48,472 bases of DNA, taken from the NCBI GenBank assembly GCA_002269645.1, contig NIVC01004362.1, forward strand, positions 1 through 48,472, read 5' to 3'. The translations under genes were made by a program, and so were the position numbers. The stretch comes from Macrostomum lignano. Taxonomy: Eukaryota. Shown here one piece after another: positions 506-34,600 of this stretch (positions within the stretch are counted from its first letter, which is position 1; each line of letters opens with the position of its first letter). The notes under the pieces were generated by a model. It searched no databases. It was not told the origin of the DNA and was given only the letters and a program-made list of their open reading frames with translations.

Positions 506-1186
506 CACCTGCACTGTTGCCGCTTCACAATTTCTGAATCATGTCGACAATCGATGGATCGCTAATGTAGCTTGCGTTTTTTCAGCCAACTTTCTACGAA
601 AAAGACTGCAGGCAAATAGATTGCAGGCGGATGATACTTCACATTACGAGCTAATTACATAGTCTACTAATGTCACGAAACTCTGATTCGGTTCGCATTA
701 CTCGTTAGTTAGTTTATTTATAGAGATCGAATACTAAAGTCTTCAGAATACGATGAGAAAAGTGGCTATGGCAATTTTTGTAAAAAAAGTTTTCTATAGT
801 GTCCCCTGAAGTTCCAATCCATTTGTATTGACAATTTACAATTAAAGCATGCCTGTGAACACGGACGGTGATGTTGACAGGTTACATATACGCTCGTAGT
901 TTTGGAAAAGTTGGCACTAATTTCAAAAGCAGAGGCGGCCTACGAAACGGGGATTTTCAACCATTCGCCACCCTCAAAATACGATTATACGAGTCAGTTG
1001 GCGCGTTTACAGGACACGCGTGATATGCTACTAACAGTAGAGCACGTGTAAATGTGGCATTAATTTAACTCGCTCCTAAATGGTCTATCAAGAATCGAGT
1101 AATGTTGCAAAGGAAAAACTAAAACTTCATATTTCTGTTTTCCCTGATGACAACTAAATGTATTTAATCGCTAATATCTGAACTCA

Positions 1187-1422
1187 ACGGGGTTGTAGCC
1201 TAGTAAATAAGGTCGTGGGTTCGACTCTCGACCCACTCGGAACGATTTGCCTTGGGCAAGACATTTAAACTCGGCATTGCTTCAGTTCACCCAGCTGTAA
1301 AATGGGTGCCAGCATTAGCTGGGGTAATTGAGGGTCTGTGGCGACCCCCCCCCAGTCCTTGTCGCTGAGCTTATTGGAGCAGGTGTGATCAATTATTATT
1401 AGTGTTGTGTGTTGTTGTTGTT
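1187..1422 (+). mobile_element. tRNA-derived SINE with CORE/Meta-like central domain
   Basis: A-box-like TAGCCTAGTAA (1196-1206) and B-box GGTTCGACTC (1218-1227). Central CCTTGGGCAAG...CTGTAAAATGGG resembles the MIR/CORE domain. (TGT)n tail at ~1403-1422. A second copy lies at 31136-31300. Confidence 0.75.
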
Positions 1423-2158
1423 GAACTCAAATGATTTCATAATTAAAACGAAAAGAAAAGAATGCAAAGTCTGAGTTTTTTGTATCAGGTTTTTATAGAA
1501 TTTTTGCTTAGCATTTTATTGAACGCCCAAGTGACGCAAAGCATGCTGGTTATATTTCTCTTAGAACAGAACACACGCCAGACTAATGCCTTCTCTCTGT
1601 ACAGTATCGGTGCCACTGATAAAATTAATTTAAACACATGTTTAATCAGACATAACCATATTTTATATGAAAGGGACAACAGCGGCGCGAGCTGAACACA
1701 GACACGTTGGGGTCAGGGTGAGGGGAGCAGGACAAAAAACAAAATAAACTATTCATAAACGCAGAAAATAAACAGGGTTTAAACACAAAACTACAGTGGG
1801 CCGCTAACTGGGCCAGACGGTGCGGGGCTAATGGAAACAAAAAAGCACACAATCGCGAACCGATGAATGGCGGATTTGGGGCGAGGATTAACCGGAAACA
1901 CGACTGGAGGATTCGAGGAAGAATAAAACGGATCAAGCGAGCGGACGACTGATTGCAGGTCGGCGAACCGATTAGAAGCTGCGACAAGCAAAAATATGAA
2001 ATTCAAAGAGAGGTTCTGCGCGAACAGGAGATGAGAAAAATGAGAGAAGAAAAAGCCACGCTCGAATTCGATAAGCGGACGCAATCAATCACTGTTAATG
2101 TCCAACAGCGCGCTGAGGTCGTCGGAGTCTGGGGACGCCGCCGACGCCAGGCCGGGCA

Positions 2159-12409: not shown

Positions 12410-12696
12410 AGCTGTTGAAGCTATTCAAGCTTTGACGTCAGATTAGATAATATTTGGCCAGACAGTGTCCGGGTCACAGCATAGCAACTCCGGTCGGTCT
12501 GCTGCAATAAGAAATTTGGATTTTAGAAATTGTCCGTTTCAAAGAGCACTTAATTATATAATGACTGAAATACTAGCTTTTATGTTAGCATGATAGGATA
12601 TACACAATTTATAGTTTAAAAGACTCCAGCGAGACAGGTCTGCTGAGCTTAGCCGAGATAGCACTACTGCGTTCACGTTACAACTGATAAGACTAA

Positions 12697-13665: not shown

Positions 13666-13785
13666 GAGCTAGGACCTACAAAAGCAAAACGACAAGAGAC
13701 TTGAAATCGGTCAAGACTGCCAAAAACAATATTGAATGCAAGCATACGGTATGCATTCACTTGCGTTCAATATTCAGTGCAGGAT

Positions 13786-16900: not shown

Positions 16901-17499
16901 ATAGAGGCACATGAAGGACCCCATGGGAGGGATAGTAACACACTAAAGGACCCAAAAAGAAAGGTAGTGGCACAGTGAAGGGCCCAGTGTGAGCGATAGT
17001 GACGCACTGAAAGACCCAGTGAGGATGGTCGCAGCCCAGAAGCAAGAAGAAGCCGAAGCACACCAAGCGACACAATTAAATCCGAACCTGTCAGTCTTGA
17101 AGTCCTCAGCCTGGGCAGTTCCATCTGGCAGAGCGGGAGAGAACCAGACCACGGCAGATTGCATGGCCAGTTGGCGCAGGTCGGGATGCCGGCTAGCCAG
17201 GTGCAGGCAGAGCCGGCGGTACCTGTCCAGTCCGGCCGAGTCCAGCAGGCGACAGGGCGGCCAGTTGGTGAGCAGCAGGCGGGCCAGCTCAGCGTGCCGC
17301 TCGGGGTCAATGCGGCCAGCCAGGGCTAACAGGTAGCGAACGACTGCGCCAGCCTGAGCCTCGGTTGCTAGGCGCTGGGCGGTCAGGCCACCTGAGGCCA
17401 ACTCGTGGCAGGCCAAGTTGTAGTGCTTTTCGCTGGCTGGATTGGAGTCGAGGGCGCGTGACAGGGCGCCACAAAGTGCGCCGGCTGCCTGAATGGCGT
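13974..17499 (-). CDS. RRN3: RNA polymerase I initiation factor RRN3/TIF-IA-like (divergent; start codon not found)
   Basis: Phase-consistent exons 17499(or 17488)-17088, 16217-15928, 15760-15193, 14679-13974. Motifs LACYLLNVLR, HGFLDYLWKR..LRCLSLLGDLCARCAFV and LFHACVRAVVRIAVHRHRELL parallel the RRN3 motifs ECYVHNLLR, FLEHLWKK..RQAAGNYIGSFLARAKFI and PFYSACQAVFYTFVFRHKQLL as I recall them. Confidence 0.8.
14755..15175. repeat. 21-bp intronic minisatellite (gggactagtgctgttggaatc)
   Basis: About 20 tandem units in an RRN3 intron. Confidence 0.95.
16255..16870. repeat. 34-bp intronic minisatellite (gaaggacatagaaggaaaaggataggggcacatt)
   Basis: About 18 tandem units in an RRN3 intron. Confidence 0.95.
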
Positions 17500-17649
17500 C
17501 TGCGCCAATTGAAGAAAGTGAAATATTTGTTTAAAATGACAAACTCTTCTTTACTAACACTGTGTTATTTACTAGAGGTTATTTTACTATCAATAATTCC
17601 AGTCATACATGCCCAACACCCGGCCGACCCGAGAAAACACATACGTAGT

Positions 17650-17713
17650 ACTAATTAGATGACGAGGCATTTAGCCTTGATAAATTACTTATAGTTACGC
17701 CTGCTGTTTACCC
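17650..17713 (-). other. 28S rRNA-like 64-nt segment, copy 1, inside a dispersed repeat
   Basis: Minus strand GGGTAAACAGCAGGCGTAACTATA...AAATGCCTCGTCATCTAATTAGT is ~50/64 identical by eye to the conserved LSU H69-H71 region. Not a full rRNA gene. Confidence 0.7.
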
Positions 17714-20700
17714 AAAAATTTTGCTGTATGTTTTATTTTATAGGTTAGCTGCTATTAACAGTAGAAGTTCTGTTTCTATAATTTTATTCTAATATTTATC
17801 AATTTGCTTATCATGAATTTGTTTATTTTACAACTAATGATATTTTTTGGATACTTATATATTTTTAGGATTTTTTAGGATTATTAATATATTCATTTTT
17901 CAAAATTTGTCCAGGAATTTAATACCAAGTAAGCCCTAGGTAGCAAGTACCAAATCAGGTCAACTTCTACTGTTTGGGTCACATGGCATTGAAGTTAAGC
18001 ATCAGGTTCATATAAGTGAGCTTATGATAACACTCTAAGTGGACATAGCACTATTGTTGATATCATTGTCAATATCAAGGATTGGATATTTTTATAAATA
18101 TAGTTCAAGGCAATAAGAAACTATTTATGATCTAATTCCATATTAACTGTGCCAATTTCACTGACATCCATAATTTTGCCAATTTACACTTAAGTAAGAA
18201 TAAGTTAATTACAACAAAAAATAAGATAGTTAAGTAACAAGTTTGGAGATAGCCCATTTCAATAATAAACACTAATAACAGACACTTTGGTAACAAATTA
18301 TGGCCACCTTGACCAACAAAGTATGTCCCCTTGCAATGAACAGGCAATACCAAACAGGTGCTGCCTATAAGTATGATCCAAGCAATCTGTTTTAGTCAAA
18401 AGGATTAATATGTATACTTTACATGCACAATGTTATAAATCCTATATACTATTTATTAAAGTTTAACATAAGTAAAAAATAGTATAATATAATAATTTTT
18501 AAAACCTTGCTGCAGTAAAACATAAAATTTATATTCTTAAGCCAAGCAAATGTGCATTGGTGTATCTTTTGTTTTAGTCTCTACTTTATGCAATGATTTT
18601 TAAATTCAATCAATGCACAAATTTATTTGTATACCAATTTCCATACATTTTCCTAGAATGTCTATAATATGTGTTGTGCATTGCCAGGGTCCAGAATGTA
18701 TAATGGTGTATACCAGAACAAGAATCCTATTTCTAGCTAAATATATACCAATGTACACCAAAAACGAAAACTTTCCCTAAAATGTTTACCAAAAATTTCT
18801 CCTAAAAGGTCATTTGGTTTTTACAAGTTGTGTTTCCTAAGAAAGGCTTTTGTATAAAAAGTCTTTAAATTTAAAATAATATGAATATACCATAGTCCAT
18901 TTCAATATAGTTATGCCAGAAATCTCTACTATACTTCTAGAAAAAAATTAGCTTTCATGTAAATGCTTGGCATAAGAATTAATAAAAAATGAATTGGCAT
19001 AAATGACTGGCACAAAAACAACTATATATTATCTTTTACATTACATTTTTCCTTGACTGGAAATAAATGTGACTGTGATTTCAATGATCATGTTAACTTT
19101 TTTTATTTAAATCAAACAGAAAATTGGAATAACTACATATTAAATTACTTGTAAAAAGTAAAACAAGTTTAAAATCTAGAAATTGTGCTATACGTAATGC
19201 ATAAACTGTTGCATTATTTTTTTTTATATTTATATGTTTATACTACACAAATACCACACTTTGGATCATGTAGTTTATGCCCAAAAATTGGGGCATGCAT
19301 TGGCCTTGCACACCAAAAGTAGGTGTGCACAGTCAGTGTGCATCATTCCTAAGAAAATAGTGTGTGCACACCTGGCATGCACTATAGAATCATGCGGAAG
19401 AATTATTGTGAAGTAGAAAAAAGATTTGAAAAGTTTATTTTAAATGTAAATTTCAAGCTTTCTAGGTTTTTAAGCTTATACTAAAGCATTTAAACAAATC
19501 TTTGTGTGCATTGACTTTCTACTATGAATAGTATCGCTGAGGAAGCAGAAAAATTAACCAAATTATTTGCCAAAAAGGGTCCATTAGGCAATACAAAAAA
19601 GGTCATTTATTGTTATATCAGCATAGTTTCAAAAAAGGTATGCATTTAATTTTTGGTATACATTTGTAATTATTTGATTTTTGTTCGGGCATGCACCTAG
19701 CATGACCCAGACTATGGCACAAATGAAAACATTAATTTTTTTTATAATAAACATGTTTTTACAAATTACCTAACCCCCCCCCTAGTCTAGGCATTATGCC
19801 TGGTGTGCGATGTATAAGCTTGGCATAAATCTGACATAAATGATGAAATTTCATGTTTTCTTCTGGTGTAACTCCAAGCATAAAACAGACTATTGTGAAT
19901 ATTTTCATTTTACACCAACTTAAATTATAGGTCTATAAAAAATTGCAAAATTTATTTATTTTATTTATTGTTAATTTTAAAGAAGCAAAAAGTTTATCAC
20001 TGACTTTCTAGTAAAGATGGCCCAAAATTTTGGCTAGAATTTTGGGTACCCAAAATTTTGGGCATTTTAATTGCAAATTTTTGGGTACAGCTTTGATTTT
20101 GGATATTACACTTTTGGGAACATTAATACCCAAAATTTCAATCATGTTGTATTGTGCTCAGGAAAAGTGCTCATTTTGGAATATGGAAGAAACAAATCAA
20201 TGCCATCATTTAATTCCAAACTAACTATACTTTAAGGTACTACAATGAGTTTTTCTAGAAAGAGCAAAACCTGCTTAAATATTTGAAAAAAAGGAAAAAA
20301 CCTTTACACTATTTTGATTGCTCAATTGGATTTCCAACAATAAAATATTTCCTGCTGGTGCAAACCATTATTAGGGTGAATTTTCAAAATTGCATACTTT
20401 GCCAAAAGTAAATTGAAGCTTAATGTTTATAAACATTAGAAATGGGACCACTAATAGGTATTTTACTTTGGTTACTTACTATGGACCAAACTGGCACTGG
20501 CAAAGACAGATTTGAGAGAAACTAATTGCTTCATTGTATTTGGCTCCAGCATTACAATAACTATATTGGGGTCTAACTGGCTAAGTTATCAAAAGAAGCT
20601 AGATACCAATCATCAGTCTCACCATCCTATACCTAACATGATTTTAGTCATATGCAACAATAATACCCTCTTTTAAGAGTTTTCAATATCTAAAATTCTG

Positions 20701-21274
20701 TGTGAAATTTTATAAAGTTTCATAAACAATGAAATTTTTGTTATTCACATGCTGGTGGTTTAAAAGTAGCTACATTTGTGCAAACATATACTATCATTAT
20801 TACTACACCTATTATTATCATAACTTTTGTATATGACCTATGAAAGTTAAAGCGCAAATTGTACTTTTCTAATTTTATTTTATCATTTGTTTAGGCACTT
20901 AGGCTGGCTTGCTTGCTTTGTAAGGTGTGGCCTTGGCCACTTTCTCCCCCTTCTTTTATGATCCAAACATTTGAAAGCTTGCTACAAGTATACATTTAAT
21001 TTTATCAATTGATTATTTAAAACAAGCCTATAGTGGTTGATGTTGAGAGTAAGTGGCCTTGAGAGGAAGCCCATGGGCAGACTATGAACCCTCCTATTAT
21101 GAAAAATTGGGCCTTGTACATTGCATAATATACACTATATGAGACAGTAAGGTAAAAAGAAAGAGAATAATAGGCTAGCCAATAGCAATAGCATGTGCTT
21201 CTCTCCAGTCTACTATAGTAGGGGGGGGGGGGAGAAAGGTGTCAGACGGCTTAATTCTAACCCCCATACCCAAT

Positions 21275-21939
21275 GGTATAAGACCAAGATAGCCACACAC
21301 CAAGATGGCCACAGCTGGGGTGGGGGTCACAGAAAATGACAACTGGTTTTCTATTGGATAGGGCAGAGATGAGAGAGAGAAAGATAATATAGGAGAGGGC
21401 AAAGATGAGAGAGAAAGATAATATAGGAGAGGACAAAGATGAGAGAGAAAAGATTAGAGACAAGAAGGCAAAGATGAGAGAGAAAAGATTAGAGACAAAA
21501 AGGCAGAGATAAGAGAAAAGATAAGAGACAAGAGTGCAGAGATGAGAGAAAAGATAAGAGACAAGAGGGCAATCCAAATTTGCTTACTTCTATCATAACT
21601 AATACCTTTACCTTCTACCTTTAACTTTTAACATATAGAAACAACACGTCAGTTTTGGTATATTGAGATAGGTTTGAAACTATTATCCAAGATACAAAAT
21701 CAAATGTCTTGTGCTAGTAGTGCTACTAGCTTTAGTAGGTAGTAATAGGCCCCTACCTGCTGTAAAGGAAAGTGTTTTTTGTTTTACTAATCTAATTTCA
21801 CTAACAAAATCTGTTTTCTCCAAGACTTGAAGCTAGGTCATACCTTACCCCAATCACAGCCAATAGGAAATGAGGAAATATATAGACCTATTCCTATCCA
21901 AGCAGCCATTCAAAACTGTGGCCATCTTGGTCATGCGCC
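21275..21939. mobile_element. Internally deleted copy of the GG-terminal non-autonomous DNA transposon
   Basis: TIR-like ends GGTATAAGACCAAGATAGCCAC / GTGGCCATCTTGGTCATGCGCC. Shares the GA-rich tract and right arm with 27271-29274. No TSD visible. Confidence 0.75.
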
Positions 21940-22087
21940 ATATATTTGATATTAAATAAAAGTAATTTCTCATTGCTAAAAACAAGTCAAATAGATAATA
22001 AAAAAGACAGTATAACAATTATGTCTATGATTTAGACTTTATAGCCATATTTCTTGTCAGTGTTATGTCTTTGTATATACATGTACA

Positions 22088-22678
22088 CCATAGTCCAGAT
22101 CATGCTGGACTTACGCCGGAGGAAAAATCCTACATTTTTTGGCACTTATGCCAGACTTACGCCAACCAAAAAAGGTCCCTCTGACTTACGCCACCCAAAA
22201 AAGGTCCCTCACAATTCTTGTGAATAGAATAGAATAGATGATTTACAATTAATTGGTGATTAATTAAATTCAGAAGTTGCAACTGTTTAAAAATCTCACA
22301 AGTTGCAAATTCTGAATCAAGAATCAAAGTAAGCATCTTGAAGCTAAAAAAACTTTTGCTATCCTACAATAGATATTCTGCTATCCTGCTATCTCATTTA
22401 TACGAACTGCAATATTTTAATGAACTTTGTTTTAATGCTGCTCTTTAACATCATAATTAATGCAAATGTGTAATGTTCTATAGTGATACATTTGATCGGG
22501 AATGATCTCATTTGTGCCAACATTTATGCCACTTGATTTATGCCATGTACTTACGCCAAGCACTTACGCCAAGGCACATTTTGGCCTATACTTACGCCAA
22601 GCACTTATGCCAGCCTCCAATCCCAAACCAGATTTACGCCAGAGATCTCCAGCGTAAACGACATGATCTGGACTATGG
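22088..22678. mobile_element. MITE, TIR CCATAGTCCAGATCATG, 8-bp TSD CATGTACA
   Basis: 17-bp TIR at both ends; CATGTACA at 22080-22087 and 22679-22686. Confidence 0.88.
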
Positions 22679-23561
22679 CATGTACATTGGGTAGACTTAT
22701 CTGGACCCAATCCCTTATTCTGCATACATACTAAGACTAAGATACTAAGATGGCCACAGCTTTGAATGGCTGCTTAGATAGGAATAGGTCTATATATTTC
22801 CTCATAGCATAATATAGCATACATATATAGCTATATAGCCAGTGATTTGAGCAATTCTATAATATTTTATTGGTACCTTTACATAACTATTGTGTGTCTA
22901 TTTATTAATGCTTAGCTACTTATATTTGCATTGTAGAACTTATGCCCATAGTTTCCCTTCTTATAAATCATTTTATATTAGACATTTTACAACTCTCACC
23001 CTACTTTATCTATTAGGCTAACTTTATGTATGATACAAGTCACAACACAAAGTACATGTATAGGAGCATCAGCATTAGCATTAATATTATAATAATGCCT
23101 TGGAAGTTGGAAGTCTCTAAATAATCAATACAACACTAGGTATTATAAAATTCGACTTCCAGACAATCTGGCTACAAGACAATCTGGCGATAGACAAACT
23201 GGCAACAGTCAAATCGGCGACAGATGATCCGGCGACAGATTTTGTATTGTACATAGATTTTATGGATTTTAGATAAAAATTTAGATATAAAACAAAACTT
23301 TACATGAACTATATACTAGCTGTAGTTTTCAATTATTATAATCATCATTATAATGTATTATCATTATCTCATATTATCATTATAAGAAAACAAGCTGTTA
23401 ATAGTTGATCCAAATCCGCACATTTTGAACCCAATAAATTCCAATTCTCTCAGTTATTTTTGCATACATTCTAATAAAAAAGTTAATAACAATAATACCA
23501 ATTATAATAATTTTAACAATCAAAGCTCCGTTTAATCTGTTTAAATAGCAATCACCGGCTT

Positions 23562-24818
23562 CCATAGTGCGGAAGGACGGGTATACGCCAGAAATCTCTG
23601 TCGTACACAGGGATTGCCTGTCGTACATGTCATATATTGCTAATTTTTGGGGGGCACTATGTCGTACACTGTCGTACATGTAAACATGTTACATGTCTGT
23701 CTGTCGTACACTTGTCAATGTCATACTACTCATACACCATGGTCAGGAAGGTGCAGCGTGTGCGCCGGAATAACATCCATCAAAATTTTTGTTGTGCGCC
23801 GCGTGCGCCGAGAAAAAAAAATTACTTGTGCGCCATGCGCCGAGAAAAATACACTTGAAAAAGCACCATCAAGTATTAAGTATCTAAATTGAATCAATAT
23901 CAATGGAAGTTCAAGCAGTTCAATCATGGCTTCTATTTGCAAAATATAAGCAAAAAGACGCAACAAAAGCCGCGAAAGGCGCAAATTTGTTAAGTTTGTT
24001 AAGTCGATTAATGAAATTTGAAATAGAAACAACATTGGAAATAACGACTATCGTGATGACTGTCGTTTATTTTATTGATTGATTGACATTTAATATACGT
24101 TTTTTTATTATTCATTATTATATTGTCACGTACACTGACGTACCTTGTGCGCCATGCGCCGAGCCATGCACCGATGCACCGAGCCATGCGCCGATGCGCC
24201 GAGCCCATGCGCGCGGCGCAGTGAAGTGTGCGCCGTGCGCCAGCAAATTGCTGATTTGCGCCGGAAAATTCCAAGGATTCTACCGTCTTCCTGGCTGTGG
24301 CTCATACATGAAGTATAGACATAGTTAGTATTCCTTTGATAGACAATCGGACACCAGTACCAGATACTTGTAGTCTCATAACTAACTCATAATGTCGTTG
24401 TTAACGTATTGCGTTGAAGCAAAGAAGTAAAAATTCAATAGTTGCACTTTTCCACTCAAAGGGTAATTTAAATTATCAGTATTATATTCGTACAAACTCT
24501 TAAATTCAATTTTATTGGCGCAAAACTATACTTGACATTGCAAGCAGAAAAGTACAATATATCTGTTGTTTTACTTTGCATATTAAAAAAATGCAATATC
24601 AAGAATTTCCCGCACCTACCCACATATTCAAAAAGTTGACTTTTTATTTATTGCCAATTTCATATAATTGAATCAATTTTTGTCGTACAGCACTTCCTTA
24701 AACTCTAACTCTGTCGTACAACACTAGTACCATTTTCCAATCCCTGTCGTACTGTTGTACAACAGGCCGAAATGAAAATTTGCCTTCCGTTGTATACAGA
24801 AATCCTTCCGCACTATGG
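23562..24818. mobile_element. Nested MITE, TIR CCATAGTGCGGAAGGA, 8-bp TSD ACCGGCTT
   Basis: TSD at 23554-23561 and 24819-24826; internal TGTCGTAC repeats. Confidence 0.85.
23737..24300. mobile_element. Doubly nested MITE, TIR CCAYRGYCAGGAAG, 8-bp TSD CTCATACA
   Basis: TSD at 23729-23736 and 24301-24308; internal TGCGCC repeats. Confidence 0.8.
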
Positions 24819-26044
24819 ACCGGCTTTCATGTAATAGCTTTTTACTACAAATTGTCGCCGGATTGACTGTTGCCCTTTTGACTGTCACCGGATTGTCTGT
24901 CGCCGGATCGTCCTGTCGCCGGATTGACTGGAAACCATAAAATTCCAACCCCAAAGCTGACTGGGGCAAAAAGACTTTGTCTTTATTAACTAAATTGTAT
25001 TTCATTCATTAACTTCATACATAAATTGTAATATGAATAGTAGGCCTAGGCCTATCAACTGGCAATCTAATCTTAGTATAGAATAACAAAAATTGCATAT
25101 AAATTCATAACTCACCAGATTCTATTTGGTTAAAATTTGCATGGTTGCATGTTTCATCCTGCTTATTAACTTCCTGCAACCAATCAAATACCTTTTCTTT
25201 TCTTTTCTCTTCCATTAAAATTTACCTTTTAGCTTAAGATCAAAAGGCTAGTCCAAAACAAATATTGCTGTTTATGCTCAGTTATATTAGTCTCAGGACT
25301 ATATTACAACGACGGGCATAGATACAATTTGTCGCTTGTGTCGTAGGGCCACCGAAATTTAACTTTTGTTGTTTCATTCTTATATTCAAAACTCCGCTGA
25401 ATTCACGACCGATGTTTAAACCGATTTAAACAAAGATTAAATTTTCAGCGCACATGACAAAATTTTAGGTTTAGAGATAGCACCATAAATTCTATAAAAA
25501 TGCAAAACAAAACTTATTTGTAAAAACAGATTATAAAGTATTTCTAAGAAGGTTTTTTTTAATGTTCTTTTTAGATTTTCAGCAAAGTAATAATAAAACT
25601 AGCAAACTAGCCGAATGAGCAAGGAGCAAAAATAGTTTATGGAAAACAATTAAAAAAAGCTGTCTGTTTGTCAGTCTGTCTGTCAGTCTGACTGTCTGTC
25701 TGCCTGTTAAACATTTTCTTAAGAACCAATTCCTTCTTTACTTTTAAAAATCATCTTATATTCATGTAAAATTGTCACGGACAAAGATTTTTGCTATGAA
25801 TCTCTTTTTTTTCTAAAATTAACAAACAGACAACAAAATATAGCCCCCCTAAATAGAAAATATTTCGGCATTCCTTCGGTTCACGATCACCACAAAAAAC
25901 AGTTGTAAGACATAAAATCCATAGTTTCCAATGAAACATAATCAAATGTTTTGTTTTTGTTTTTGCACTGTAGTAAGCAAAATATAAGGTGATTGTAAAC
26001 CAAATCTGGAAAAATAGAAGGAGGCTCTTCATATTGCTTGTAAA

Positions 26045-26500
26045 AATTTGTAAAGCATAACTTTTTGTCTCCTAAATTATAGGGATAGGCCTATTAGTGC
26101 TTTAAAATTGTGATTATTGAATGGCAATAGGCCTAGCCAAGAAGATTGTGAAAAAAGTGAAAATTGTGCAAAGTAAGGCTTTTAAGGCAGTCATACATTC
26201 AACAAAGTTAAATAGTTGTACTGCTTTTTTCTTGAAAATCCAAACAGATTCTGGTTCTGGAATCTGTTGGCATGTAGGCTTTTCACACAATGATTCCAGA
26301 ACCAGAATCGGTTTGGATCTTCTGAGACAAAACGCAGTATAACTATTTAACTTTGTTGAATGTTTGACTGCCTTAACAGCCTCATGTTGCATATTTTTCA
26401 CTTTCTTCTTGGCTATTGCAATTCAATAATTACAACTTTAAAGCATGTACATCCCTCTAGTTAAAGAGAGAAAAAGTTATACTTTGCAAATTGGATTTGG
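26045..26500. mobile_element. Foldback (long palindromic) element
   Basis: Arm 26182-26224 pairs with 26334-26376 (2 mismatches in 43). Arm 26238-26264 pairs with 26292-26318 (1 mismatch). Outer arms are more degenerate. Confidence 0.75.
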
Positions 26501-27039
26501 TTCTAGAACCAGAACAAGCAATATGAAAAGGCCCATAAAGAGCCTTAAGGTGATTGTAAACCGAAACTGGCAAAATAGATGGTAATCATAAACCAAAAGG
26601 ATTGCCAATATTCTAAAGACAGCAAGTACCCCCTCTCCCAGATATTGTAGAAACATCTATCCAGATAAAAAGAATACCTAAATAGCAAGCATCTCTGGAT
26701 AGAAAGAATCCCATATATCATACATGTAGCCAATACCATATCCCCCTCTCCCAAACAGCAAGTACCCTCCCCCCTTGAGAGTAAGCATCTATTAGATAGC
26801 AAGTAGCTAATGCAAATATGTTACCTCTACTAATGCAATAGTTGCTTTCTCAGGTTGTGCAACAATCTACATCTCAGCTAGCACAATAATCTCTTTTAGA
26901 CAATGTAATAATCAGTTTCTCAGCTATTAAAATAATCATTTTCTCATCTAGTGCAATAATTTTTTATTCATTAAGTCCAAAAATTGATGTCTTAGCTTAT
27001 ATGCAATATCCCTTCCCTTTCTAATATAGTACAATAATC

Positions 27040-29390
27040 CTTAGCTTATCAAGTGTAATATTCCTTGGTTTATCTAGTGCAATATTCTTTATTATCCAGT
27101 GCAAAAATCCATGGCTTATCAAGTGCAATAATCCTTGGTATATTAGGCCTTGGCCTAAGTGCAATAATCCTTGGTTTATCAATATCAAGTGCAATAATCC
27201 TTGATAATCCTTGGCTTATCAAGTGTAACAATCCTTGGCTTATCAAGTGCAATAATCCTTAGTTTATCAAGGTGTAAGACCAAGATGGCCACACATCAAG
27301 ATAGCCACAGCTGGGGTGGGGGTCACAGAAAATGACAACTGGTTTACTATTGGATAGCTTTGGGTGGGGAGATGTGGGATTGAAATGGGGGGGGGGGGTT
27401 AGATAGGCAGTTAGAAAATTTTGAGTATATTGGGTTAAAGACAAAAATGGTTACGAGTCTTGATTTCCTACTTATAGTAGGCCCCTAAGAGGTGTAAACA
27501 TATTTTGTATTAAACAAATATCTTCTTCATATAAAATCAGGTATAGTTTTTTCGATTTCTCTCTTTGGTTGAGACTAATTTACTTGTTTAAAAGGGATAA
27601 AAAGTAGGTAAATTCCTACAAAATTTTAAACAGCAGGGCAGGACCTCCTGTGGAGTAGACCCATAGAAAATTTTTTGGTTTCCAAAAATAATTTTGACTT
27701 ATAGGGAATAAACACATACTGTACGGGCCTAATTTTTTAGCTCAAATCCTAAATATTTAAACATTGCCACGGGAACACATAGAGTCACAACATAGATTGA
27801 ATATAATAGAAAGCGTAAATAAATAAGCGAAAAGCGATATCCAATGAGGCAACACAAGCAAACTTTCAATATGCTATTTGGAAGGGGATTAAGCAATCAC
27901 GGGCTGACTACTATTCTGCCACTCAGTGGGGGTCAAACAAGAGACTCCTAATAAATAAAATTTCTTAGTCCTATAATCTATAATGGCATGAGTGCTAGCT
28001 AGAAAGGTGCTACCTAGGAGTGACATTGCCATTGAATTGCCAACAATTTCTATCTTTGGAGCTAAGGGTACAAGCTGGAGCAAGAGGGCACCGTTGCTAT
28101 CCACACCCTAGAGATCAATGTAGATATAAGAATAAAGAATGTACAATGGCCAGTGGGCAGTAGGGGATTGCATTTGTGCTCCCTTTCTCAAGAGCCTTAT
28201 TCCTTTCTTTCTCTGCCCCATCACTACTTGGTTGTATAAGTGCCGTCAATCTCAATCAGGTATGTGGACATACAATGGTTCACATTGTTCTCAACCCCAT
28301 TCCACTATAGTTTTTATCTAATGTGACTAAGCTAGGTGCTTTTAGTGCAGGGGTTGGCAAACTTTTTACCTTGATTTAGAACCTAGCTCATGACTGCCCT
28401 TCTGGGTCCACTTCGTTGGGCCCCTAAGCAAAGCAAGGAGTCCTGATGACAGCAAGCCAGAGGTGAAGAAAGAGGGTAAGGAATAGAGAAGAGAAATATG
28501 AGCATAGGATAAAGGAGAGGTGAAGGAATAAAGGAGAAGAGAGTTGATGAGAGGAGATATTAAATATGAGCGGAGAGAGAGGAGAAGGAAGATTAATGGA
28601 GAGGAGAAAGAAAGGAATGGAGAAGATAATGAAGAGGAAAAGGGAGATGAGAGGAAAGAGGTGAGGAGAGAGAAGAGGATAGAGGTGTGGAGAGAGGAGA
28701 GGGCAGAGATGAGAGAGAGAAAAGATAAGAGACAAGAGGGCAGAGATGAGAGCGAGAACAGATGAGAGGAGAGGGCAAAGATGAGAGAGAAAAGATAAGA
28801 GGAAAGGGCAGAGATGAGAGAGAAAAAGATGATACAGGAGAGGGCAGAGATAAGAGAGAGAAAAGATTAGAGACAAGAGGGCAGAGATGAGAGAGAAAAG
28901 ATAAGAGACAAGAGGGCACTCCAATTTTTGCTTATCATAACTAATACCCTTACCCTCTACCTTTAACTTTTAACATATACAAACAACACGTCAGTTTTAG
29001 TATATTGAGATAGGTTTTAAACTATTATCCATGATATAAAAATCAAATCTCTTGTGCTAATAGTGCTACTAGCTTTAGTAGGTAGTAATACTAGCTATAA
29101 AGGGAAGTGTTTTTTGTTTTACTAATCTAATTTCAATAACAAAATCTGTCTTCTCCAAGACTTAAAGCTAGGTCATACCCCATCCCAATCATAGCCAATA
29201 GGAAATGAGGAAATATATAGACCTATTCCTATCCAAGCAGCCATTCAGAGCTGTGGCCATCTTGGTCATGCGCCTTTATCAAGTGCAATAATATTAGGTT
29301 TATCAAGTGCAATAATATTTGGTTTATCAAGCGTAGTAATCTTTGGTTTATCAGGTGCAATAATCCTTGGTTTATCAAGTGCCACAATCC
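27040..29390. repeat. 24-bp minisatellite (ttggcttatcaagtgcaataatcc) split by a 2-kb transposon
   Basis: Units at ~27040-27270 resume at 29275-29390. Confidence 0.85.
27271..29274. mobile_element. Non-autonomous DNA transposon with 5'-GG TIR (GGCGCATGACCAAGATGGCCAC) and 8-bp TSD TTTATCAA (Merlin-like)
   Basis: TSD at 27263-27270 and 29275-29282. GG termini with an 8-bp TSD fit Merlin; the superfamily call is tentative. Confidence 0.8.
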
Positions 29391-30608
29391 AGGTATTTTA
29401 ATTAGTCCTTTAAACAAAAGCTTTCAATAAAAGTTAGAAAGGAACTAGATTCAAACATAGGTTGCTGCATTAGCAGTCCGGTGTGTTCATATCTAGGCTA
29501 GCTCTCATTAAATTTATAAATAATTTTGTAATATTTATAATTCAATATTCACACCAAGTCAGTTGAGTAAAAGTCATACAAAGCAGTTATGACATAATCA
29601 ATTTTTTAGGTAAGTTAGTACCAGTCTCTATTAAAGTTAGCAATATGGTTATGCAATATAAATCAAGTATTGTGCTATTTCTACATTGCATTTTCAATTC
29701 TGTGATGACACAATTTAATTCAGTGTCAAAATTCAGCCAGTACACAGACTAAAATAAATAAAAAGCCAATTGTGATGTAATCTACTTCAGAATCAGAATT
29801 CAAACAGTCAGAAAATTGTTTAAGCAATTTTTGCTAAAATTGATCATATATCTAGATACCTAGATAGATATTTACCAACAAACCATTTTTAGTATATGGA
29901 CAAGCATACAAAAATTAGAGATTTAGTATATTTAGATAGATTTTCAATATATTAGAAATAGTATGTATGCATTAAGCTGCACGCATTAAAGTCAACTCCA
30001 AATAAGTAAACTTAGGGATAAGTCAACTTGAATTAGTTCATATTTTTCTAGAGAAATAAAAGATCTATAAACCTTAAAAATCTAGAAATTAGCAACTTAA
30101 AAGCTATTGTTATATTCAACTTTTTGTTTACTAATCAATTATTATTCATAAATACTGATATAATAGTTTTGAAACTAATGACCTATAGGATAAGCCTAAT
30201 ACAAAAACTTTCATATTTTTCAATATTTCTGCCTACTTATTACCTATTATCTATCAAATCTATTATTATCAATTTATTAAAAAACAATTACTAGTGGTAA
30301 TGCTATACAAAAAAGTTGGGATAAATATATAAGTCTATAATATATTTATTTTATACAAGGCTACTTGGTTTATTTAGTGGATAAATATCTATAAGTCAGG
30401 CTACAATTAAAGCTAAAGCCAAAGGGAATAATTATAATATAATATAATTCTATTATAGTATTTATCTTCTCAAGACTTGAAGATCTACACATAATACAAA
30501 TTCATACATGCGCAACTGCTGGCCGACCTAGCCGATCTGGTCACTATAAATTGTGGTGGACCAGGGGTAAGTCGCAAAAATGCCCAGCCTAAAGAATACA
30601 GATGTAGT

Positions 30609-30672
30609 ACTAATTAGATGACGAGGCATTTAGCCCTTATAAGACATTCATAGTTACTCCTGCCGTTTACCC
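30609..30672 (-). other. 28S rRNA-like 64-nt segment, copy 2, inside a ~260-bp structured repeat (30507-30766)
   Basis: Minus strand GGGTAAACGGCAGGAGTAACTATGAATGTCTTATAAGGGCTAAATGCCTCGTCATCTAATTAGT is ~55/64 identical to conserved 28S. Flanked by ACATGCGCAAC / GTTGCGCATGT inverted repeats. Confidence 0.78.
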
Positions 30673-31135
30673 AAAATTGCGTTGGGTTTCTTTCACAGGT
30701 AAGTTGTATTTTTGGTCAAAAAGTAAGTCGCATGGCCAGTGTAAATCAGGAGGGTTGCGCATGTGTGTACAAATTACTATTAATAGAAAATGAATGAAAT
30801 ATGAGACCTAGGCTTAGTTGTTATTATCTATCATTATGTTAAACAATGCTATTATTATCTATATCCATTATTGACTATTTGACAAAATGCTAGTTTATAA
30901 AATACCTAGCACCCTTATTTCAAACCAAATGTCTAATCAATTCAATTTTAAATATACCTCCTAGGCCTATCTCTAGTCTAGTATAGGATACTAGGCCCTT
31001 ATAAGATCAATATTTGTGGGTTTTAATTTTGAATAATAGGAGATTTATTAAACCAATCCCAATTAGGCAAAATTTGAAACCAATAGCTTTGCTGCAGCTA
31101 TTGCATGGTATATCTAAAAGCTATATATAGCCATA

Positions 31136-31300
31136 CCTACCCTTAATTATCCTAGCTAATTTTAGTACCCATTTTAGCTGTGTCATAAACTAAAGAAATG
31201 CAGAGTTAAATGTCTTGCAAATTGTTCTGAGTGGGTCAAGACTTGAACTTTCATCCTTCAAGTTGTGAGTCTAGCACTCTAACTACTAGACTACAACCCC
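31136..31300 (-). mobile_element. Second, hypermutated copy of the tRNA/CORE-like SINE
   Basis: Reverse complement GGGGTTGTAGTCTAGT...GTTCAAGTCTTGACCCACTCAGAACAATTTGCAAGACATTTAA...AAAATGGGTACT aligns with 1188-1335. Confidence 0.8.
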
Positions 31301-31685
31301 CTTGTCCATAAAGAAGATCTTTGAGTGCAAATACTCAAATTGGCTAAATCTTTATATATTAAAACACTGTTATGCAATAGTCAAGGCTTAGACAAGACAT
31401 CTATAGAAAAGGCAGATATATTCTAATTAGCTGTCATATAGCAAGTAGTTAAGCTATACTATGTCATAAAATTATATTATATTTGTTTAATTTTGCCTAA
31501 TTGTTTTTTTTAAATATTTAACCAAAAAATAAAGAGAAACCTAAAAATCAACATGCAGTTTTTTGACGGATTTCGCACACCTAAGTCTTTTTTGTGCTTA
31601 GAATTTTGGTTACCTCCAAATTGACAAATAAGTAAATGAAATTGTTGCATGCACTAATTCTACTTTCATTTACAACAGCATAATC

Positions 31686-34600
31686 ATGTCTGAAGTATAT
31701 GCTACACAGTTCATAGATGGCTATAAAGACTTTGATGATATAATTGACACCAATGGGGCTACTCCTACCATTGAGAATGGTAGCCAGAATCCTGTAAATG
31801 GAAATGGATTACCAACTTGGGGACGGCTGTTATCTGTAAATGATGATTTTCCTTCTATTGGTAAGTTACATTGATGCAATCTGAGCTTATATTCTTATAT
31901 ACCAAGCCATGGGTCACCCTTGTCTCCCCCAGTTCCTCCAGCAAGCCACCTAATCTTTGCTAACTAATTTTCCCTATCAAAAATGACTCGCAGAGCTGCA
32001 GAAGCACTCAATTTCTGTTGGTCGCGGCAGCTCGTGCGACTTTTGCCTGCCCAGTTTAAAGCGGAGCCAGCAAATTTCTACTCATCACTTCAATCTGCTA
32101 CGAATGGTAAGACTGTTCAATCAATCAATCATATTGCTCCCTAGGTTGATCTCACGTTCAGATTAAATATTATTAAAAATCACAAAACTTCCTTCCAGCC
32201 GGACGTTAAGGTAGACAGTCAGAGAAACGATTCTTTGGGCCAGTCAGTTAGCAACGGCGAGAGCAAAATAAACGCTAATGGCAATGGCGACTGCGCCGAC
32301 GAACAAGCTAATGGCCACGTCGAGCCGACCGTTACCATGGTCACTGTTTTGCAAGATCACAGTACTAATGGAACGTTTGTTGATGGCGTTAAGGTTGGTA
32401 AGCTGATCATGGATCGGGAAATCTTTGTGTTATGCAGTGCTTTATTAATGTTGACACTCACTTGGGCTTATCTGTTTACTAGTCAGACCACAGCCCACCC
32501 CGTTTTCTACCACCCGCTGATTTTATGACTGTGTGTAAGGCTATCTGTTTACTAGTCAGACCACAGCCCACCCCGTTTTCTACCACCCGCTGATTTTATG
32601 ACTGTGTGTAAGGCTATCTGTTTACTAGTCAGACCACAGCCCACCCCGTTTTCTACCACCCGCTGATTTTATGACTGTGTGTAAGGCTATCTGTTTACTA
32701 GTCAGACCACAGCCCACCCCGTTTTCTACCACCGCTAATCCTGCTGATATTATAGCTTTCCGATCGAAACCGTTTGTTGTGGGTGGGCTTAATTATACAT
32801 GTAAAATCGATTTATAATTGGGCCACAAAACTAAGCAACACAAATCTCAACGCTATACCGAGCAGAGAACCGCAGGGAAGTTGAACTCAATGACAAGAGC
32901 TAAGATATTTTTCTGAAATCTTTCAATTCAATAATGTTTTTACATAAAGGCTTACTTATAGGAAATTCTTACATTAACCCGTCAAATGAGCATATGAGTG
33001 GTTAGTTACTTTATCTCAGCCATAGACGGTCTTTTGGTGGGCTATGCGCTTAACAGAGGGACTTACTGGCGGTGTTATTTTGTTTCACACCTCCCTCCAC
33101 TCTTTGCCAGGCAAGGACAAGCAGGTATTGCTCCAATCCAACCAGGTTATCTCTCTGCTGTCGCCTAGCAACCGCTGCTGGATGTACACCGCCTGCGGCA
33201 GCTCCGAATCGGACCAGAAGCCGAAGCTGCCGGCCTCTCTAGCCGACAAATATGTGCTGTCCAAGCAGCTCGGCGAGGGCGGCTTTGGCGCAGTTTATCT
33301 CGCCTACGAGATTGGCACCTGCGAGCCATGCGCAATCAAAATTCTAAGCAAGCGGGACTTGTTCTACTTAGGCAATGTGAGTTTTTTGTGTACTTAGTGT
33401 GTTTCCCCTAGCGATTAATGTATTTCCCCTAGTGCTTTATGTGTTTTCCCCAGTGATTGATGCGTTTTTCCTAGTGATTGATGTGTTTCCTCTTGTGATT
33501 GATGTTTCCCCTAGTGATTGATGTGTTTCCCCTGGAGATTGATGTGTTTCCCCTAGTGATTGATGTGTTTCCCCTGGAGATTGATGTGTTTGCCTAGTGA
33601 TTGATGTGTTTGCCTAGTGATTGATGTGTTTCCCCTAATGCTTGATGTTTTTTCCTAGTGATTGATGTGTTTCCCCTAGTGATTGATGTGTTTTCCTAGT
33701 GATTGATGTGTTTCCCCTAGTGATTGATGTGTTTCCCCTAGTGATTGATGTGTTTCCCCTAGTGATTGATGTGTTTCCCCTAGTGCTTGATGTTTTTTCC
33801 TAGTGATTGATGTTTTTTCCTAGTGATTGATGTGTTTCCCCTAGTGATTGATGTGTTTCCCCTAGTGCTTGATGTGTTTCCCCTAGTGCTTGATGCTTTT
33901 TCCTAGTGATTGATGTTTTTTCCTAGTGATTGATGTGTTTCCCCTAGTGATTGATGTGTTTCCCCTAGTGATTGATGTGTTTCCCCTAGTGATTGATGTG
34001 TTTCCCCTAGTGATTGATGTGTTTCCCCTAGTGATTGATGTGTTTCCCCTAGTGCTTGATGTTTTTTCCTAGTGATTGATGTGTTTCCCCTAGTGATTGA
34101 TGTGTTTGCCTAGTGATTGATGTGTTTCCCCTAGTGATTGATGTGTTTGCCTAGTGATTGATGTGTTTGCCTAGTGATTGATGTGTTTCCCCTAGTGATT
34201 GATGTGTTTCATTTAGCGATTAATGTATCTCCCCTAGTGCTTTATGTATTTTCCCCAGTGATTGATGTGTTTCCCCTAGTGATTGATGTGTTTCCCCTGG
34301 AGATTGATGTTTCCCCTAGTGATTGATGTTTCCCCTAGTTATTGATGTATTTCCCCTAGTGATTGATGTGTTTGCCTAGTGATTGATGTGTTTCCCCTAG
34401 TGATTGATGTGTTTCCCTTAGTGATTGATGTGTTTGCCTAGTGATTGATGTGTTTCCCCTAGTGATTGATGTGTTTCCCTTAGTGATTGATGTGTTTGCC
34501 TAGTGATTGATGTGTTTTCCTTAGTGATTGATGTGTTTCCCCTAGTGATTAATGTTTCCCCTAGTTATTGATGTGTTTCCCCTAGTGATTGATGTGTATC

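What the first reader, a model, noticed from the sequence alone, without database searches (positions are those of the whole stretch)
17560..31960. A ~14-kb domain with RIP-like C>T hypermutation (CpG and CpA/TpG) in an animal genome
Seen: the block is AT-rich, visibly CpG-poor and TA-rich, with sharp borders against CpG-rich genes. The SINE copy inside (31136-31300) differs from the CpG-intact copy outside (1187-1422) by CpG loss (gttcga>gttcaa, ctcgg>ctcag, acga>acaa) and also by CpA/TpG>TpA changes (ttcag>tttag, ctgggg>ctagga, attgagg>attaagg, tgcc>tact). The two GG-TIR elements differ the same way (ttggta/ttagta, gataca/gatata, gctgta/gctata, cttgaa/cttaaa, atcaca/atcata), and TIR ggcgca became ggtgta or ggtata. 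Some nested MITEs keep their CpGs, as if inserted later. Known: CpA>TpA hypermutation of repeats is the hallmark of fungal RIP, while animal methyl-deamination is mainly CpG. Inference: a locus-level mutagenic genome defence (non-CpG methylation or a deaminase) not, to my knowledge, described in animals.
Basis: partly seen in the sequence, partly recalled or inferred. Interest (0 to 1): 0.82.

Follow-up and report, generated by a model that had tools for sequence, protein, structure and literature searches.

The report
CpG-depleted, transposon-filled spacer between two genes

Summary
The block is real. From about 17,506 to 31,993 the sequence is 33% GC. Its CpG-void parts hold 25 CpGs where 253 are expected. 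The borders are sharp against genes with CpG o/e of about 1. Nested transposons keep their CpGs in proportion to their apparent youth.

The RIP-like reading fails. CpA/TpG is not depleted: (CpA+TpG)/(ApC+GpT) is 1.39. Only 1 of 55 windows inside the block meets the RIP criteria, against 6 of 132 outside. Decayed CpGs stop at TpG or CpA and none has gone on to TpA. A unique coding exon (CHK2 exon 1) shares the block's composition, so the effect is regional and not triggered by repeats. Loss of CpGs alone accounts for the GC difference between the block and the young inserts.

Small samples do suggest that C>T at CpA is about 2-3 times more frequent than at CpT or CpC inside the block, and not outside it. 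There is no 5' context preference. If this is real, it fits low-level CpA methylation by a DNMT3-type enzyme, which is already known to be mutagenic in a primate germline. It does not point to a new defence.

The organism was not identified. It is animal-like, with best Chk2 matches of about 35% identity.

Verdict: an ordinary methylated domain of a mosaic genome. Interest is low to moderate.

The parts
17506..31993 (.). AT-rich, CpG-depleted domain. It runs from the splice acceptor of the RRN3 exon to the acceptor of CHK2 exon 2.
   Evidence: GC and CpG o/e profiles. 149 CpGs observed against 395 expected over 17720-31800.
17720..21250 (.). Oldest CpG-void stretch, with no recognisable intact element.
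   Evidence: CpG o/e 0.10, CpA+TpG o/e 1.27, TpA o/e 0.89. It holds decayed TTATGCC/TTACACC motif copies: 0 CG, 6 TG, 2 CA, 0 TA. No Pfam hit.
17597..17756 (+). Partial MITE copy that retains its CpGs, of the same family as 30496-30778.
   Evidence: 134-nt alignment at 78% identity to 30582-30710. CpG o/e is about 0.9-1.0 here.
21275..21939 (+). GG-TIR non-autonomous element, copy 1. It contains the AG-rich minisatellite at 21360-21572.
   Evidence: Aligns to copy 2 at 94% (5' part) and 87.5% (3' part). TRF result.
22070..22690 (.). MITE of intermediate age. It has a perfect 17-nt TIR core (22088-22104 / 22662-22678) and internal TTACGCC motifs.
   Evidence: TIR. CpG o/e 0.57 and CpA+TpG o/e 1.32. 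Motif states are 7 CG and 4 TG.
22744..22805 (-). Inverted fragment of the 3' end of the GG-TIR element.
   Evidence: 95% identical to 21870-21931 and to 29205-29266.
23154..24938 (.). Young TIR element that retains its CpGs, flanked by a perfect 9-bp target-site duplication (ATAAAATTC).
   Evidence: TIRs. The duplication was read directly from the sequence. CpG o/e 1.26. Its two TIRs already differ at 5 of 11 CpG sites against 2 of 17 other C sites.
26908..27270 (+). 24-bp minisatellite, left part. The array was split by insertion of GG-TIR copy 2.
   Evidence: TTTATCAA is present on both flanks of the insert.
27271..29274 (+). GG-TIR element, copy 2. It has an expanded internal region and an AG-rich minisatellite at 28691-28918.
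29275..29403 (+). 24-bp minisatellite, right part.
30496..30778 (.). MITE with 14-nt TIRs (30503-30516 / 30754-30767). It retains part of its CpGs.
   Evidence: CpG o/e 0.70.
31136..31304 (-). tRNA-derived SINE copy inside the block, CpG-free and 37% GC.
   Evidence: nhmmer E = 3e-13 to the outside copy. Alignments. Spectrum.
1183..1430 (+). SINE copy outside the block, CpG-intact and 50% GC over the aligned part.
31686..31860 (+). CHK2 exon 1 (ATG to GTAAGT donor). It lies inside the CpG-poor domain, with GC 38%, GC3 0.26 and 1 CpG.
   Evidence: Translation and splice sites. The exon 1 plus exon 2 product aligns with the N-terminus of Homarus Chk2 across the junction.
31994..32106 (+). CHK2 exon 2, the first CpG-normal sequence on the right, with GC 50%, GC3 0.57 and 6 CpGs.
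16946..17505 (-). RRN3 exon abutting the left border. It opens with a splice acceptor and has no start codon, so at least one upstream RRN3 exon and intron lie in or beyond the block.
   Evidence: ORF and translation. RRN3 Pfam match in the neighbouring exon, 15189-15821. Sequence.

Best explanation
The block is a long-resident, transposon-filled spacer or intron region between RRN3 and the body of CHK2. It has been heavily CpG-methylated in the germline, while the adjacent GC-rich genes have not. Spontaneous deamination of 5-methylcytosine converted about 90% of its CpGs to TpG or CpA, and ordinary AT-biased background mutation added to this. Transposons that inserted later carry progressively more of their original CpGs. 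The AT-richness is mostly the native composition of this genome's transposon and intergenic DNA. CpG loss lowers it by a further 3-4 GC points.

Shown: the CpG deficit, the sharp borders, the decay series by age, the TpG/CpA end-products, and the absence of a RIP signature.

Inferred: that the cause is 5mC, since no methylation data are available, and that methylation is confined to this domain.
For: 1. The void segments hold 25 CpGs against 253 expected, and every NCG/CGN context is equally depleted, at 0-0.18.

2. Neighbouring genes have CpG o/e of 0.95-1.3. Other AT-rich DNA in the window is not depleted: the polinton-like region has 29% GC and o/e 0.91, and non-coding AT-rich flanks have 0.86.

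3. There is an in-situ age series. The element with an intact 9-bp duplication has o/e 1.26. The MITE with perfect TIR cores has 0.57, with 7 CG and 4 TG motifs. Old motif relics show 0 CG, 6 TG and 2 CA. The background is 0.10.

4. CpG hypermutability is seen directly. The TIRs at 23 kb differ at 5 of 11 CpG sites against 2 of 17 other C sites. All six clearly aligned CpGs of the outside SINE copy correspond to TG, CA or, in one case, CT in the inside copy.

5. CpA+TpG o/e is raised to 1.20-1.32 in the oldest unique DNA and in the decaying MITE.

6. Removing 90% of the CpGs from a sequence composed like the young inserts gives 32.0-33.5% GC. The observed value is 32.9%.

7. CHK2 exon 1, which is unique coding DNA, shares the regional composition: GC3 is 0.26, against 0.57 in exon 2 and 0.66-0.75 in neighbouring genes.

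8. CpG methylation targeted at transposons, and mosaic methylation, are documented in invertebrates (PMC8857917, PMC11292947).
Against: There is no direct methylation measurement.

The arrangement is unusual for an invertebrate-type genome. Here the housekeeping gene bodies look unmethylated, while a transposon-rich spacer that includes the CHK2 start exon looks methylated.

CpA+TpG o/e over the whole void fraction is only 1.13, less than full CpG feed-in would predict (about 1.3). TpA o/e is slightly raised, at 0.94. This leaves room for some extra CpA>TpA flux.

The inside SINE copy lost about 13 GC points, more than CpG loss alone explains. Transitions run 15 GC>AT to 1 AT>GC.
Confidence: 0.75

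Rival explanations
1. Methylation of the domain extends at a low level to CpA, following the known CpG >> CpA > CpT/CpC preference of DNMT3-type enzymes. Deamination therefore adds a secondary CpA>TpA component to the dominant CpG decay. This supplements the best explanation and does not replace it.
For: CpA sites change more often than other non-CpG C sites in all five tabulated block data sets; a sixth set of extra pairs, tallied only by hand, showed no excess. The SINE gives 5/11 against 2/22 (p = 0.027). Block minisatellites give 11/81 against 6/188 by events (p = 0.004) and 7/13 against 5/32 by distinct positions (p = 0.02). The GG-TIR, D16 and 23-kb TIR pairs have odds ratios of 1.3-1.9, none significant. 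The Mantel-Haenszel odds ratio is about 2.8. Minisatellites outside the block show no excess: 21/684 against 35/1244, OR 1.09. The reverse change, TpA>CpA, is not raised. There is no 5'-neighbour effect. TpA o/e is slightly higher in the block. There is a precedent: offspring of an MBD4-null macaque carry excess C>T at CpA, attributed to CpA methylation in oocytes (PMC10760519).
Against: The counts are small. Events in minisatellites are not independent. Additional block pairs show no excess, at 3/24 against 4/33. TpG/CpA sites derived from CpG never progressed to TpA: 0 of 8 and 0 of 5. There is no net depletion of CpA/TpG.
Confidence: 0.2
2. One reading: a RIP-like defence that is triggered by repeats and prefers CpA, acting at this locus in an animal through non-CpG methylation or a deaminase.
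For: Individual TG/TA and CA/TA differences between repeat copies are real. A modest CpA excess is present. The SINE inside the block shows 15 GC>AT transitions against 1 AT>GC.
Against: The RIP indices are negative, and fewer windows pass the criteria inside the block than outside: 1 of 55 against 6 of 132. CpA/TpG is in excess, not depleted. Unique DNA and a coding exon are affected equally. The duplicated tracts are short (62-665 bp) and differ by only 5-12%, in a mixed spectrum that includes many transversions. CpG loss alone explains the GC deficit. There is no 5' context preference of the kind a deaminase would leave.
Confidence: 0.04
3. There is no methylation domain. CpG is hypermutable genome-wide, and only old, neutral, non-recombining DNA shows the deficit. 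On this view genes keep their CpGs through selection, GC-biased gene conversion and rapid turnover of intronic minisatellites, and young transposons simply have not had time to decay.
For: The age series fits this view equally well. Gene regions are GC-rich with GC3 of 0.66-0.75, which is suggestive of biased gene conversion. Several intronic arrays are very young; for example, the 73-bp repeat is 100% identical between copies.
Against: CpG o/e is 1.0-1.3 across 15 kb of genes, including introns and non-repeat intergenic DNA. That is hard to maintain under genome-wide methylation. AT-rich non-coding stretches outside the block keep an o/e of 0.86. The switch happens within about 130 bp, inside a single CHK2 intron.
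Confidence: 0.08
4. Assembly chimera, contaminant or base-calling artefact.
For: The composition changes abruptly at both borders.
Against: CHK2 exon 1 inside the block splices in frame, with canonical GT..AG sites, to exon 2 outside it. Together they form one FHA N-terminus that aligns to crustacean Chk2. The RRN3 exon ends at a splice acceptor at the left border. A SINE family is shared between the block and the flank. The CpG loss is graded by element age, which no artefact would produce.
Confidence: 0.01

Closest known systems
Methylated, CpG-depleted domains of mosaically methylated invertebrate genomes. Transposon-targeted CpG methylation in cnidarians and other invertebrates is described in PMC8857917. 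The 'mosaic' pattern of gene bodies plus, in some species, transposons is described in PMC11292947.
   Same: A kilobase-scale domain with CpG o/e far below 1, next to domains at about 1. The borders are sharp. TpG/CpA are the decay products. Transposon-rich DNA is the target.
   Different: Methylation itself was not measured here. The neighbouring housekeeping gene bodies (SETD2-like, RRN3, most of CHK2) look unmethylated, the opposite of canonical gene-body methylation. The depleted domain includes the start exon of CHK2 and probably its promoter. The depletion, at o/e 0.10, is more extreme than typical vertebrate bulk DNA (my own knowledge, not tested here).
Fungal repeat-induced point mutation (RIP). 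Surveys: PMC3318451 and PMC12543289.
   Same: C>T transitions accumulate in transposon-rich, AT-rich blocks with sharp borders against GC-rich genes.
   Different: The dinucleotide signature is absent, because CpA/TpG is not depleted. The process does not depend on duplication. The dominant target is CpG in all flanking contexts. The organism is animal-like, not a fungus.
C>T at CpA from non-CpG methylation in the mammalian maternal germline (MBD4-null macaque, PMC10760519).
   Same: C>T at CpG is dominant, with a secondary excess at CpA (ACA, CCA, GCA) and no 5' specificity. Here the commonest non-CpG contexts are CCA, ACA and TCA.
   Different: There the effect is genome-wide and revealed by loss of a repair enzyme. 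Here it would be confined to one domain and accumulated over evolutionary time. The statistical support here is weak.
AID/APOBEC editing of retroelements in vertebrates (recalled from my own knowledge, not searched in the library).
   Same: G>A or C>T hypermutation of mobile elements.
   Different: APOBEC footprints are strand-coordinated and defined by the 5' neighbour (TC, CC, WRC). Here changes occur on both strands (G>A 10, C>T 5 in the SINE) and show no 5' preference (p = 0.82).

Membership tests
Fungal-type RIP | Depletion of the target dinucleotide and excess of the product: TpA/ApT >= 0.89 together with (CpA+TpG)/(ApC+GpT) <= 1.03 and a positive composite index. | tested here: not met
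   For the block, TpA/ApT is 0.96-0.98 but (CpA+TpG)/(ApC+GpT) is 1.35-1.39. Only 1 of 55 500-bp windows passes all criteria, against 6 of 132 outside.
Fungal-type RIP | Mutation is restricted to duplicated sequence (homology-dependent). | tested here: not met
   Unique DNA (17720-21250) and the single-copy CHK2 exon 1 are as CpG-poor and AT-rich as the repeats. Self-BLAST finds few duplicated tracts.
Fungal-type RIP | A RID/DIM-2-type cytosine methyltransferase and a premeiotic dikaryotic phase. | not testable with these tools
   Only one 48-kb window is available and the organism is unidentified. The gene content looks animal-like.
Methylated CpG-depleted domain (mosaic methylation) | CpG o/e far below 1 across a domain, with neighbouring domains near 1. 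| tested here: met
   o/e is 0.10 against 0.86-1.3. The void segments hold 25 CpGs against 252.7 expected.
Methylated CpG-depleted domain (mosaic methylation) | A reciprocal excess of the deamination products TpG/CpA. | tested here: inconclusive
   o/e is 1.20-1.32 in the oldest unique DNA and in the decaying MITE. It is only 1.07-1.13 in other parts and over the whole void fraction, and the baseline elsewhere is 1.06-1.20. Site by site, the products are TG/CA.
Methylated CpG-depleted domain (mosaic methylation) | CpG sites mutate faster than other C sites, and decay scales with residence time. | tested here: met
   The 23-kb TIRs differ at 5 of 11 CpG sites against 2 of 17 other C sites. The age series runs 1.26 > 0.57-0.70 > 0.10.
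Methylated CpG-depleted domain (mosaic methylation) | 5-methylcytosine is actually present on the domain in germline DNA, and DNMT1/DNMT3 are encoded in the genome. | not testable with these tools
   No read-level or methylome data and no whole genome are available.
AID/APOBEC-type editing | Strand-coordinated clusters with a 5'-neighbour preference (TC, CC or WRC). | tested here: not met
   Rates by 5' neighbour are A 0.15, C 0.17, G 0.12 and T 0.18 (chi-square p = 0.82). Both strands are affected.

The most novel reading that the evidence does not exclude
In this unidentified, animal-like genome, silencing of a transposon-rich domain involves cytosine methylation that spills over from CpG to CpA in the germline. 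It leaves a two-tier mutational footprint confined to the domain: CpG lost about 90%, and CpA lost about 3 times faster than CpT or CpC. It also drags the start exon of a housekeeping checkpoint gene into the AT-rich, CpG-poor regime. That would be an evolutionary record of mutagenic non-CpG methylation outside vertebrates.
Probability: 0.15. Interest if true: 0.55.

Novelty: new member of a known kind. Interest (0 to 1): 0.27.

Why it matters
As it stands, the block is a textbook-style example of how CpG o/e maps past germline methylation, and of how nested transposons can date it. It also warns against inferring RIP from a few hand-picked TG/TA differences.

Two features may deserve a genome-wide look in this species. 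First, the polarity is inverted relative to most invertebrates: the transposon spacer looks methylated and the housekeeping gene bodies do not. Second, the compositional boundary runs through a gene, with CHK2 exon 1 at GC3 0.26 and exon 2 at 0.57. If the weak CpA signal held up genome-wide, it would give a simple sequence-only test for historical non-CpG methylation in non-model animals.

Tried and rejected
1. Species identification. The SET-domain ORF found no homologues, probably because the search only considers proteins of similar length. A CHK2 pseudo-protein gave best hits of only about 35% identity, to crustacean and insect Chk2/Lok. The pPolB ORF gave a best hit of 42%, with no close paralogue. 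The organism therefore stays unidentified.

2. The idea that the window comes from Amoebidium, which combines transposon, viral and CGC/GCG gene-body methylation (PMC11244446). This is not supported: CGC/GCG is not depleted in the genes here, at o/e 1.18-1.26. A copepod with genome-wide CpG depletion (PMC11706791) does not fit either, because the genes here have o/e of about 1.

3. Polarising SINE changes with outside copies.

4. A hidden gene in the block. All stop-to-stop ORFs of at least 45 aa, except those I dropped before the search (mainly minisatellite-derived and some overlapping fragments), gave no Pfam hit.

5. The two D16 copies as LTRs of one large element. Rejected: they are copies of a roughly 280-bp MITE with its own TIRs.

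6. tRNA and Rfam scans found nothing in the block.

7. More sensitive self-alignment added only four short pairs.
Full report
**Setting**

The window carries several housekeeping-type genes.
- An XBP1-like bZIP gene lies on the minus strand at about 2278-2910, with a Hac1/Xbp1-type unconventional intron at 2599-2673.
- A SETD2-like gene is also on the minus strand, with an SRI domain at 5339-5674, AWS+SET domains at 7081-8520, and a 1000-aa low-complexity ORF at 9195-12197.
- RRN3 is on the minus strand, with a Pfam match at 15189-15821 and an exon at 16946-17505.
- A CHK2/Lok-type FHA-kinase gene is on the plus strand, from 31686 to about 36.5 kb.
- A protein-primed family-B polymerase of polinton/adintovirus type sits in 27-29% GC DNA from 41815 onward.

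The best Chk2 hits are crustacean and insect proteins at about 35% identity. The genome is therefore animal-like, but the species could not be determined. Its own proteins appear to be absent from the protein collection.

Mostly yes.
- Per-kb GC drops from 47-66% to 28-43% between about 17.5 and 32 kb.
- Per-kb CpG o/e drops to 0.04-0.41 over the same span, except at 23-26 kb.
- A 300-bp scan shows zero or one CpG per window over most of 17,700-21,900, 25,900-27,500, 28,000-30,300 and 30,800-31,800. Density returns abruptly at about 31,990.
- These void segments total 9,385 bp and contain 25 CpGs against 252.7 expected. All eight NCG/CGN trinucleotides are depleted alike.
- AT-richness alone does not explain the deficit. 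The polinton-like DNA (29% GC) has CpG o/e 0.91, and AT-rich non-coding stretches elsewhere have 0.86.
- The nested elements that keep CpGs are real. The TIR element at 23154-24938 has o/e 1.26, and the MITEs at 22070-22690 and 30496-30778 have 0.57 and 0.70.

TpA o/e is 0.94, against 0.72-0.87 elsewhere, except 0.68 in the mixed right flank.

The SINE comparison is weaker than it was presented. The inside copy is in reverse orientation, is about 65-72% identical, and has large indels.

**Anatomy of the block**

No protein domain is detectable in the block's ORFs. It is a nest of non-autonomous elements.
- There are two copies of a 'GG-TIR' element, at 21275-21939 and 27271-29274, plus an inverted 62-nt fragment at 22744-22805.
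- The second GG-TIR copy inserted into a 24-bp minisatellite and is flanked by TTTATCAA on both sides.
- A MITE with perfect 17-nt TIR cores lies at 22088-22678.
- A roughly 1.8-kb TIR element lies at 23154-24938, with an intact 9-bp target-site duplication.
- A hairpin repeat lies near 26.1-26.4 kb.
- A roughly 280-bp MITE family has copies at 17597-17756 and 30496-30778.
- One SINE copy lies at 31136-31304.

The block is physically continuous with both genes.
- The RRN3 exon at 16946-17505 opens with a polypyrimidine-AG acceptor and has no start codon. Upstream RRN3 sequence must therefore lie in or beyond the block.
- CHK2 exon 1 (31686-31860) lies inside the block. It splices with canonical GT..AG sites to exon 2 (31994-32106), and the product aligns with lobster Chk2 across the junction.

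This continuity excludes a chimera or a contaminant.

**Test of the RIP-like reading**

RIP at CpA should deplete CpA/TpG relative to ApC/GpT and inflate TpA/ApT. Several results contradict this.
- The block has (CpA+TpG)/(ApC+GpT) of 1.35-1.39, within the range of the rest of the window (1.22-1.43). TpA/ApT is 0.96-0.98 and the composite index is negative.
- Only 1 of 55 500-bp windows inside passes all three standard criteria, against 6 of 132 outside.
- In the oldest unique DNA, CpA+TpG o/e is 1.27 with TpA at 0.89. This is the footprint of CpG>TpG/CpA, not of CpA>TpA.
- Site by site, the six clearly aligned CpGs of the outside SINE copy correspond to TG (twice), CA (three times) and CT (once) in the inside copy, and never to TA.
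- In the TTAYGCC motif family, the intermediate-age MITE has 7 CG and 4 TG. The old relics at 18.9-19.9 kb have 0 CG, 6 TG, 2 CA and 0 TA.
- RIP depends on duplication, yet unique DNA and CHK2 exon 1 (GC3 0.26, one CpG) share the regime. Exon 2, 133 bp away, has GC3 0.57 and six CpGs, and neighbouring genes have GC3 of 0.66-0.75.
- The block's GC (32.9% in the void parts) is what results from removing 90% of the CpGs from sequence composed like the young inserts (35-37.5% GC falls to 32.0-33.5%). No large non-CpG C>T flux is needed to explain the AT-richness.

**Is there any CpA effect?**

I tallied transitions by the 3' neighbour of the C-bearing allele wherever both flanking bases were conserved.

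| Data set | CpA sites changed | Other non-CpG C sites changed | Result |
|---|---|---|---|
| SINE, inside vs outside copy | 5/11 | 2/22 | p = 0.027 |
| GG-TIR copies | 10/64 | 10/104 | not significant |
| MITE pair (D16) | 4/10 | 5/19 | not significant |
| 23-kb TIRs | 1/8 | 1/10 | not significant |
| Four further short pairs | 3/24 | 4/33 | no excess |
| Block minisatellites, by events | 11/81 | 6/188 | p = 0.004 |
| Block minisatellites, by distinct unit positions | 7/13 | 5/32 | p = 0.02 |
| Seven arrays outside the block | 21/684 | 35/1244 | OR 1.09 |

Each array was polarised against its own consensus.
- The reverse change, TpA>CpA, is not raised.
- The Mantel-Haenszel odds ratio across the block sets is about 2.8.
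- The 5' neighbour has no effect (p = 0.82), and both strands are hit. This excludes an AID/APOBEC-type footprint.

A modest CpA excess inside the block is therefore possible but not established. If it is real, its hierarchy (CpG far above CpA, and CpA above CpT/CpC) matches the known specificity of DNMT3-type enzymes (my own knowledge). The consequence, C>T at CpA in a germline, has been documented in offspring of an MBD4-null macaque (PMC10760519).

**Mechanism judged most likely**

The spacer is a long-standing target of germline CpG methylation, plausibly because of its transposon load. The adjacent GC-rich genes are not methylated. 5mC deamination erased CpGs at a rate well above other substitutions, and the 23-kb TIRs show this directly, with 5 of 11 CpG sites changed against 2 of 17 others. 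Each new insertion started CpG-rich and decays in place, which gives the series 1.26, then 0.57-0.70, then 0.10.

The CpG deficit, the borders, the products and the age series are shown. Methylation as the cause, and its restriction to this domain, are inferred.

The main rival holds that CpG is hypermutable genome-wide and that genes are protected by selection or biased gene conversion. It is disfavoured because CpG o/e is 1.0-1.3 through introns and non-coding parts of the flanks, and because the switch occurs inside a single intron.

**Comparison with known systems**

The block behaves like the methylated fraction of a mosaically methylated invertebrate genome. Transposon-directed CpG methylation in invertebrates is already described (PMC8857917, PMC11292947).

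It differs from the commonest pattern in two ways. Housekeeping gene bodies appear spared, while a transposon-rich spacer that includes a gene's first exon appears methylated.

It is not a member of the RIP family. Two defining features were tested and not met, and the enzymatic feature is untestable here.

**Verdict**

Regional, methylation-type C>T decay is supported. A RIP-like process, and something new to animals, are not. This is an ordinary phenomenon in a tidy example, with a weak residual CpA signal that only genome-wide data could settle.

Noticed in passing
window 41815-45771 (+), continuing to the window end at 48472; possibly also ORFs at 40308-41731: A polinton/adintovirus-like protein-primed family-B DNA polymerase gene with an endonuclease-VII-like insert. 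It is interrupted by one in-frame stop at about 44359-44361. The DNA has 29% GC, GC3 0.19 and CpG o/e about 0.9, so unlike the block it is not CpG-depleted. The best homologues are 42% identical or less, include aphid genome proteins, and some carry PF03175. The neighbouring small ORFs have no family hits. The element runs off the window, so its extent is unknown.
   Followed up: partly
window 2599-2673 (-), within the bZIP ORF at 2278-2910: Rfam match to the non-canonical Hac1/Xbp1 intron (43.8 bits, gathering score 41) inside a bZIP-domain ORF. This looks like an XBP1-type gene carrying its IRE1-spliced intron.
   Followed up: no
window 31686-32106: The compositional boundary runs through the CHK2 gene. 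Exon 1 has GC 38%, GC3 0.26 and 1 CpG. Exon 2, 133 bp downstream, has GC 50%, GC3 0.57 and 6 CpGs. Synonymous codon usage thus follows the regional regime and not the gene.
   Followed up: yes
window 12691-13675, 14753-15175, 16255-16831, 33398-34601, 35206-35612, 39038-39863: Introns of the GC-rich genes are packed with long minisatellites, with periods of 24, 21, 34, 21, 30 and 15 nt and 13-58 copies each. Most units contain no CpG. They create local low CpG o/e windows (0.25-0.45 at 13-14, 16-17 and 39-40 kb) that should not be read as evidence of methylation.
   Followed up: partly
window 32469-32733: A 73-bp tandem repeat of 3.6 copies at 100% identity in CHK2 intron sequence. This is a very recent expansion.
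   Followed up: no
window 16946-17505 (-) and upstream: The RRN3 exon next to the block has no start codon and begins at a splice acceptor. The missing 5' exon, roughly 30-60 codons by comparison with human RRN3 (recalled from memory), was not found. The block may therefore be RRN3 intron 1, with a promoter shared with CHK2 near 31.6 kb.
   Followed up: partly
window 9195-12197 (-): A 1000-codon open reading frame at 67% GC encodes a low-complexity protein with a run of about 30 prolines, poly-Q, and RS/RR-rich tracts. It has no Pfam domain. It is presumably the disordered N-terminal exon of the SETD2-like gene.
   Followed up: no
window 1183-1430 vs 31136-31304: The outside SINE copy lacks about 22 nt of the tRNA-like head that the inside copy retains, so neither copy is a clean proxy for the ancestor. 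Substitutions run 15 GC>AT transitions to 1 AT>GC from the outside copy to the inside copy.
   Followed up: yes
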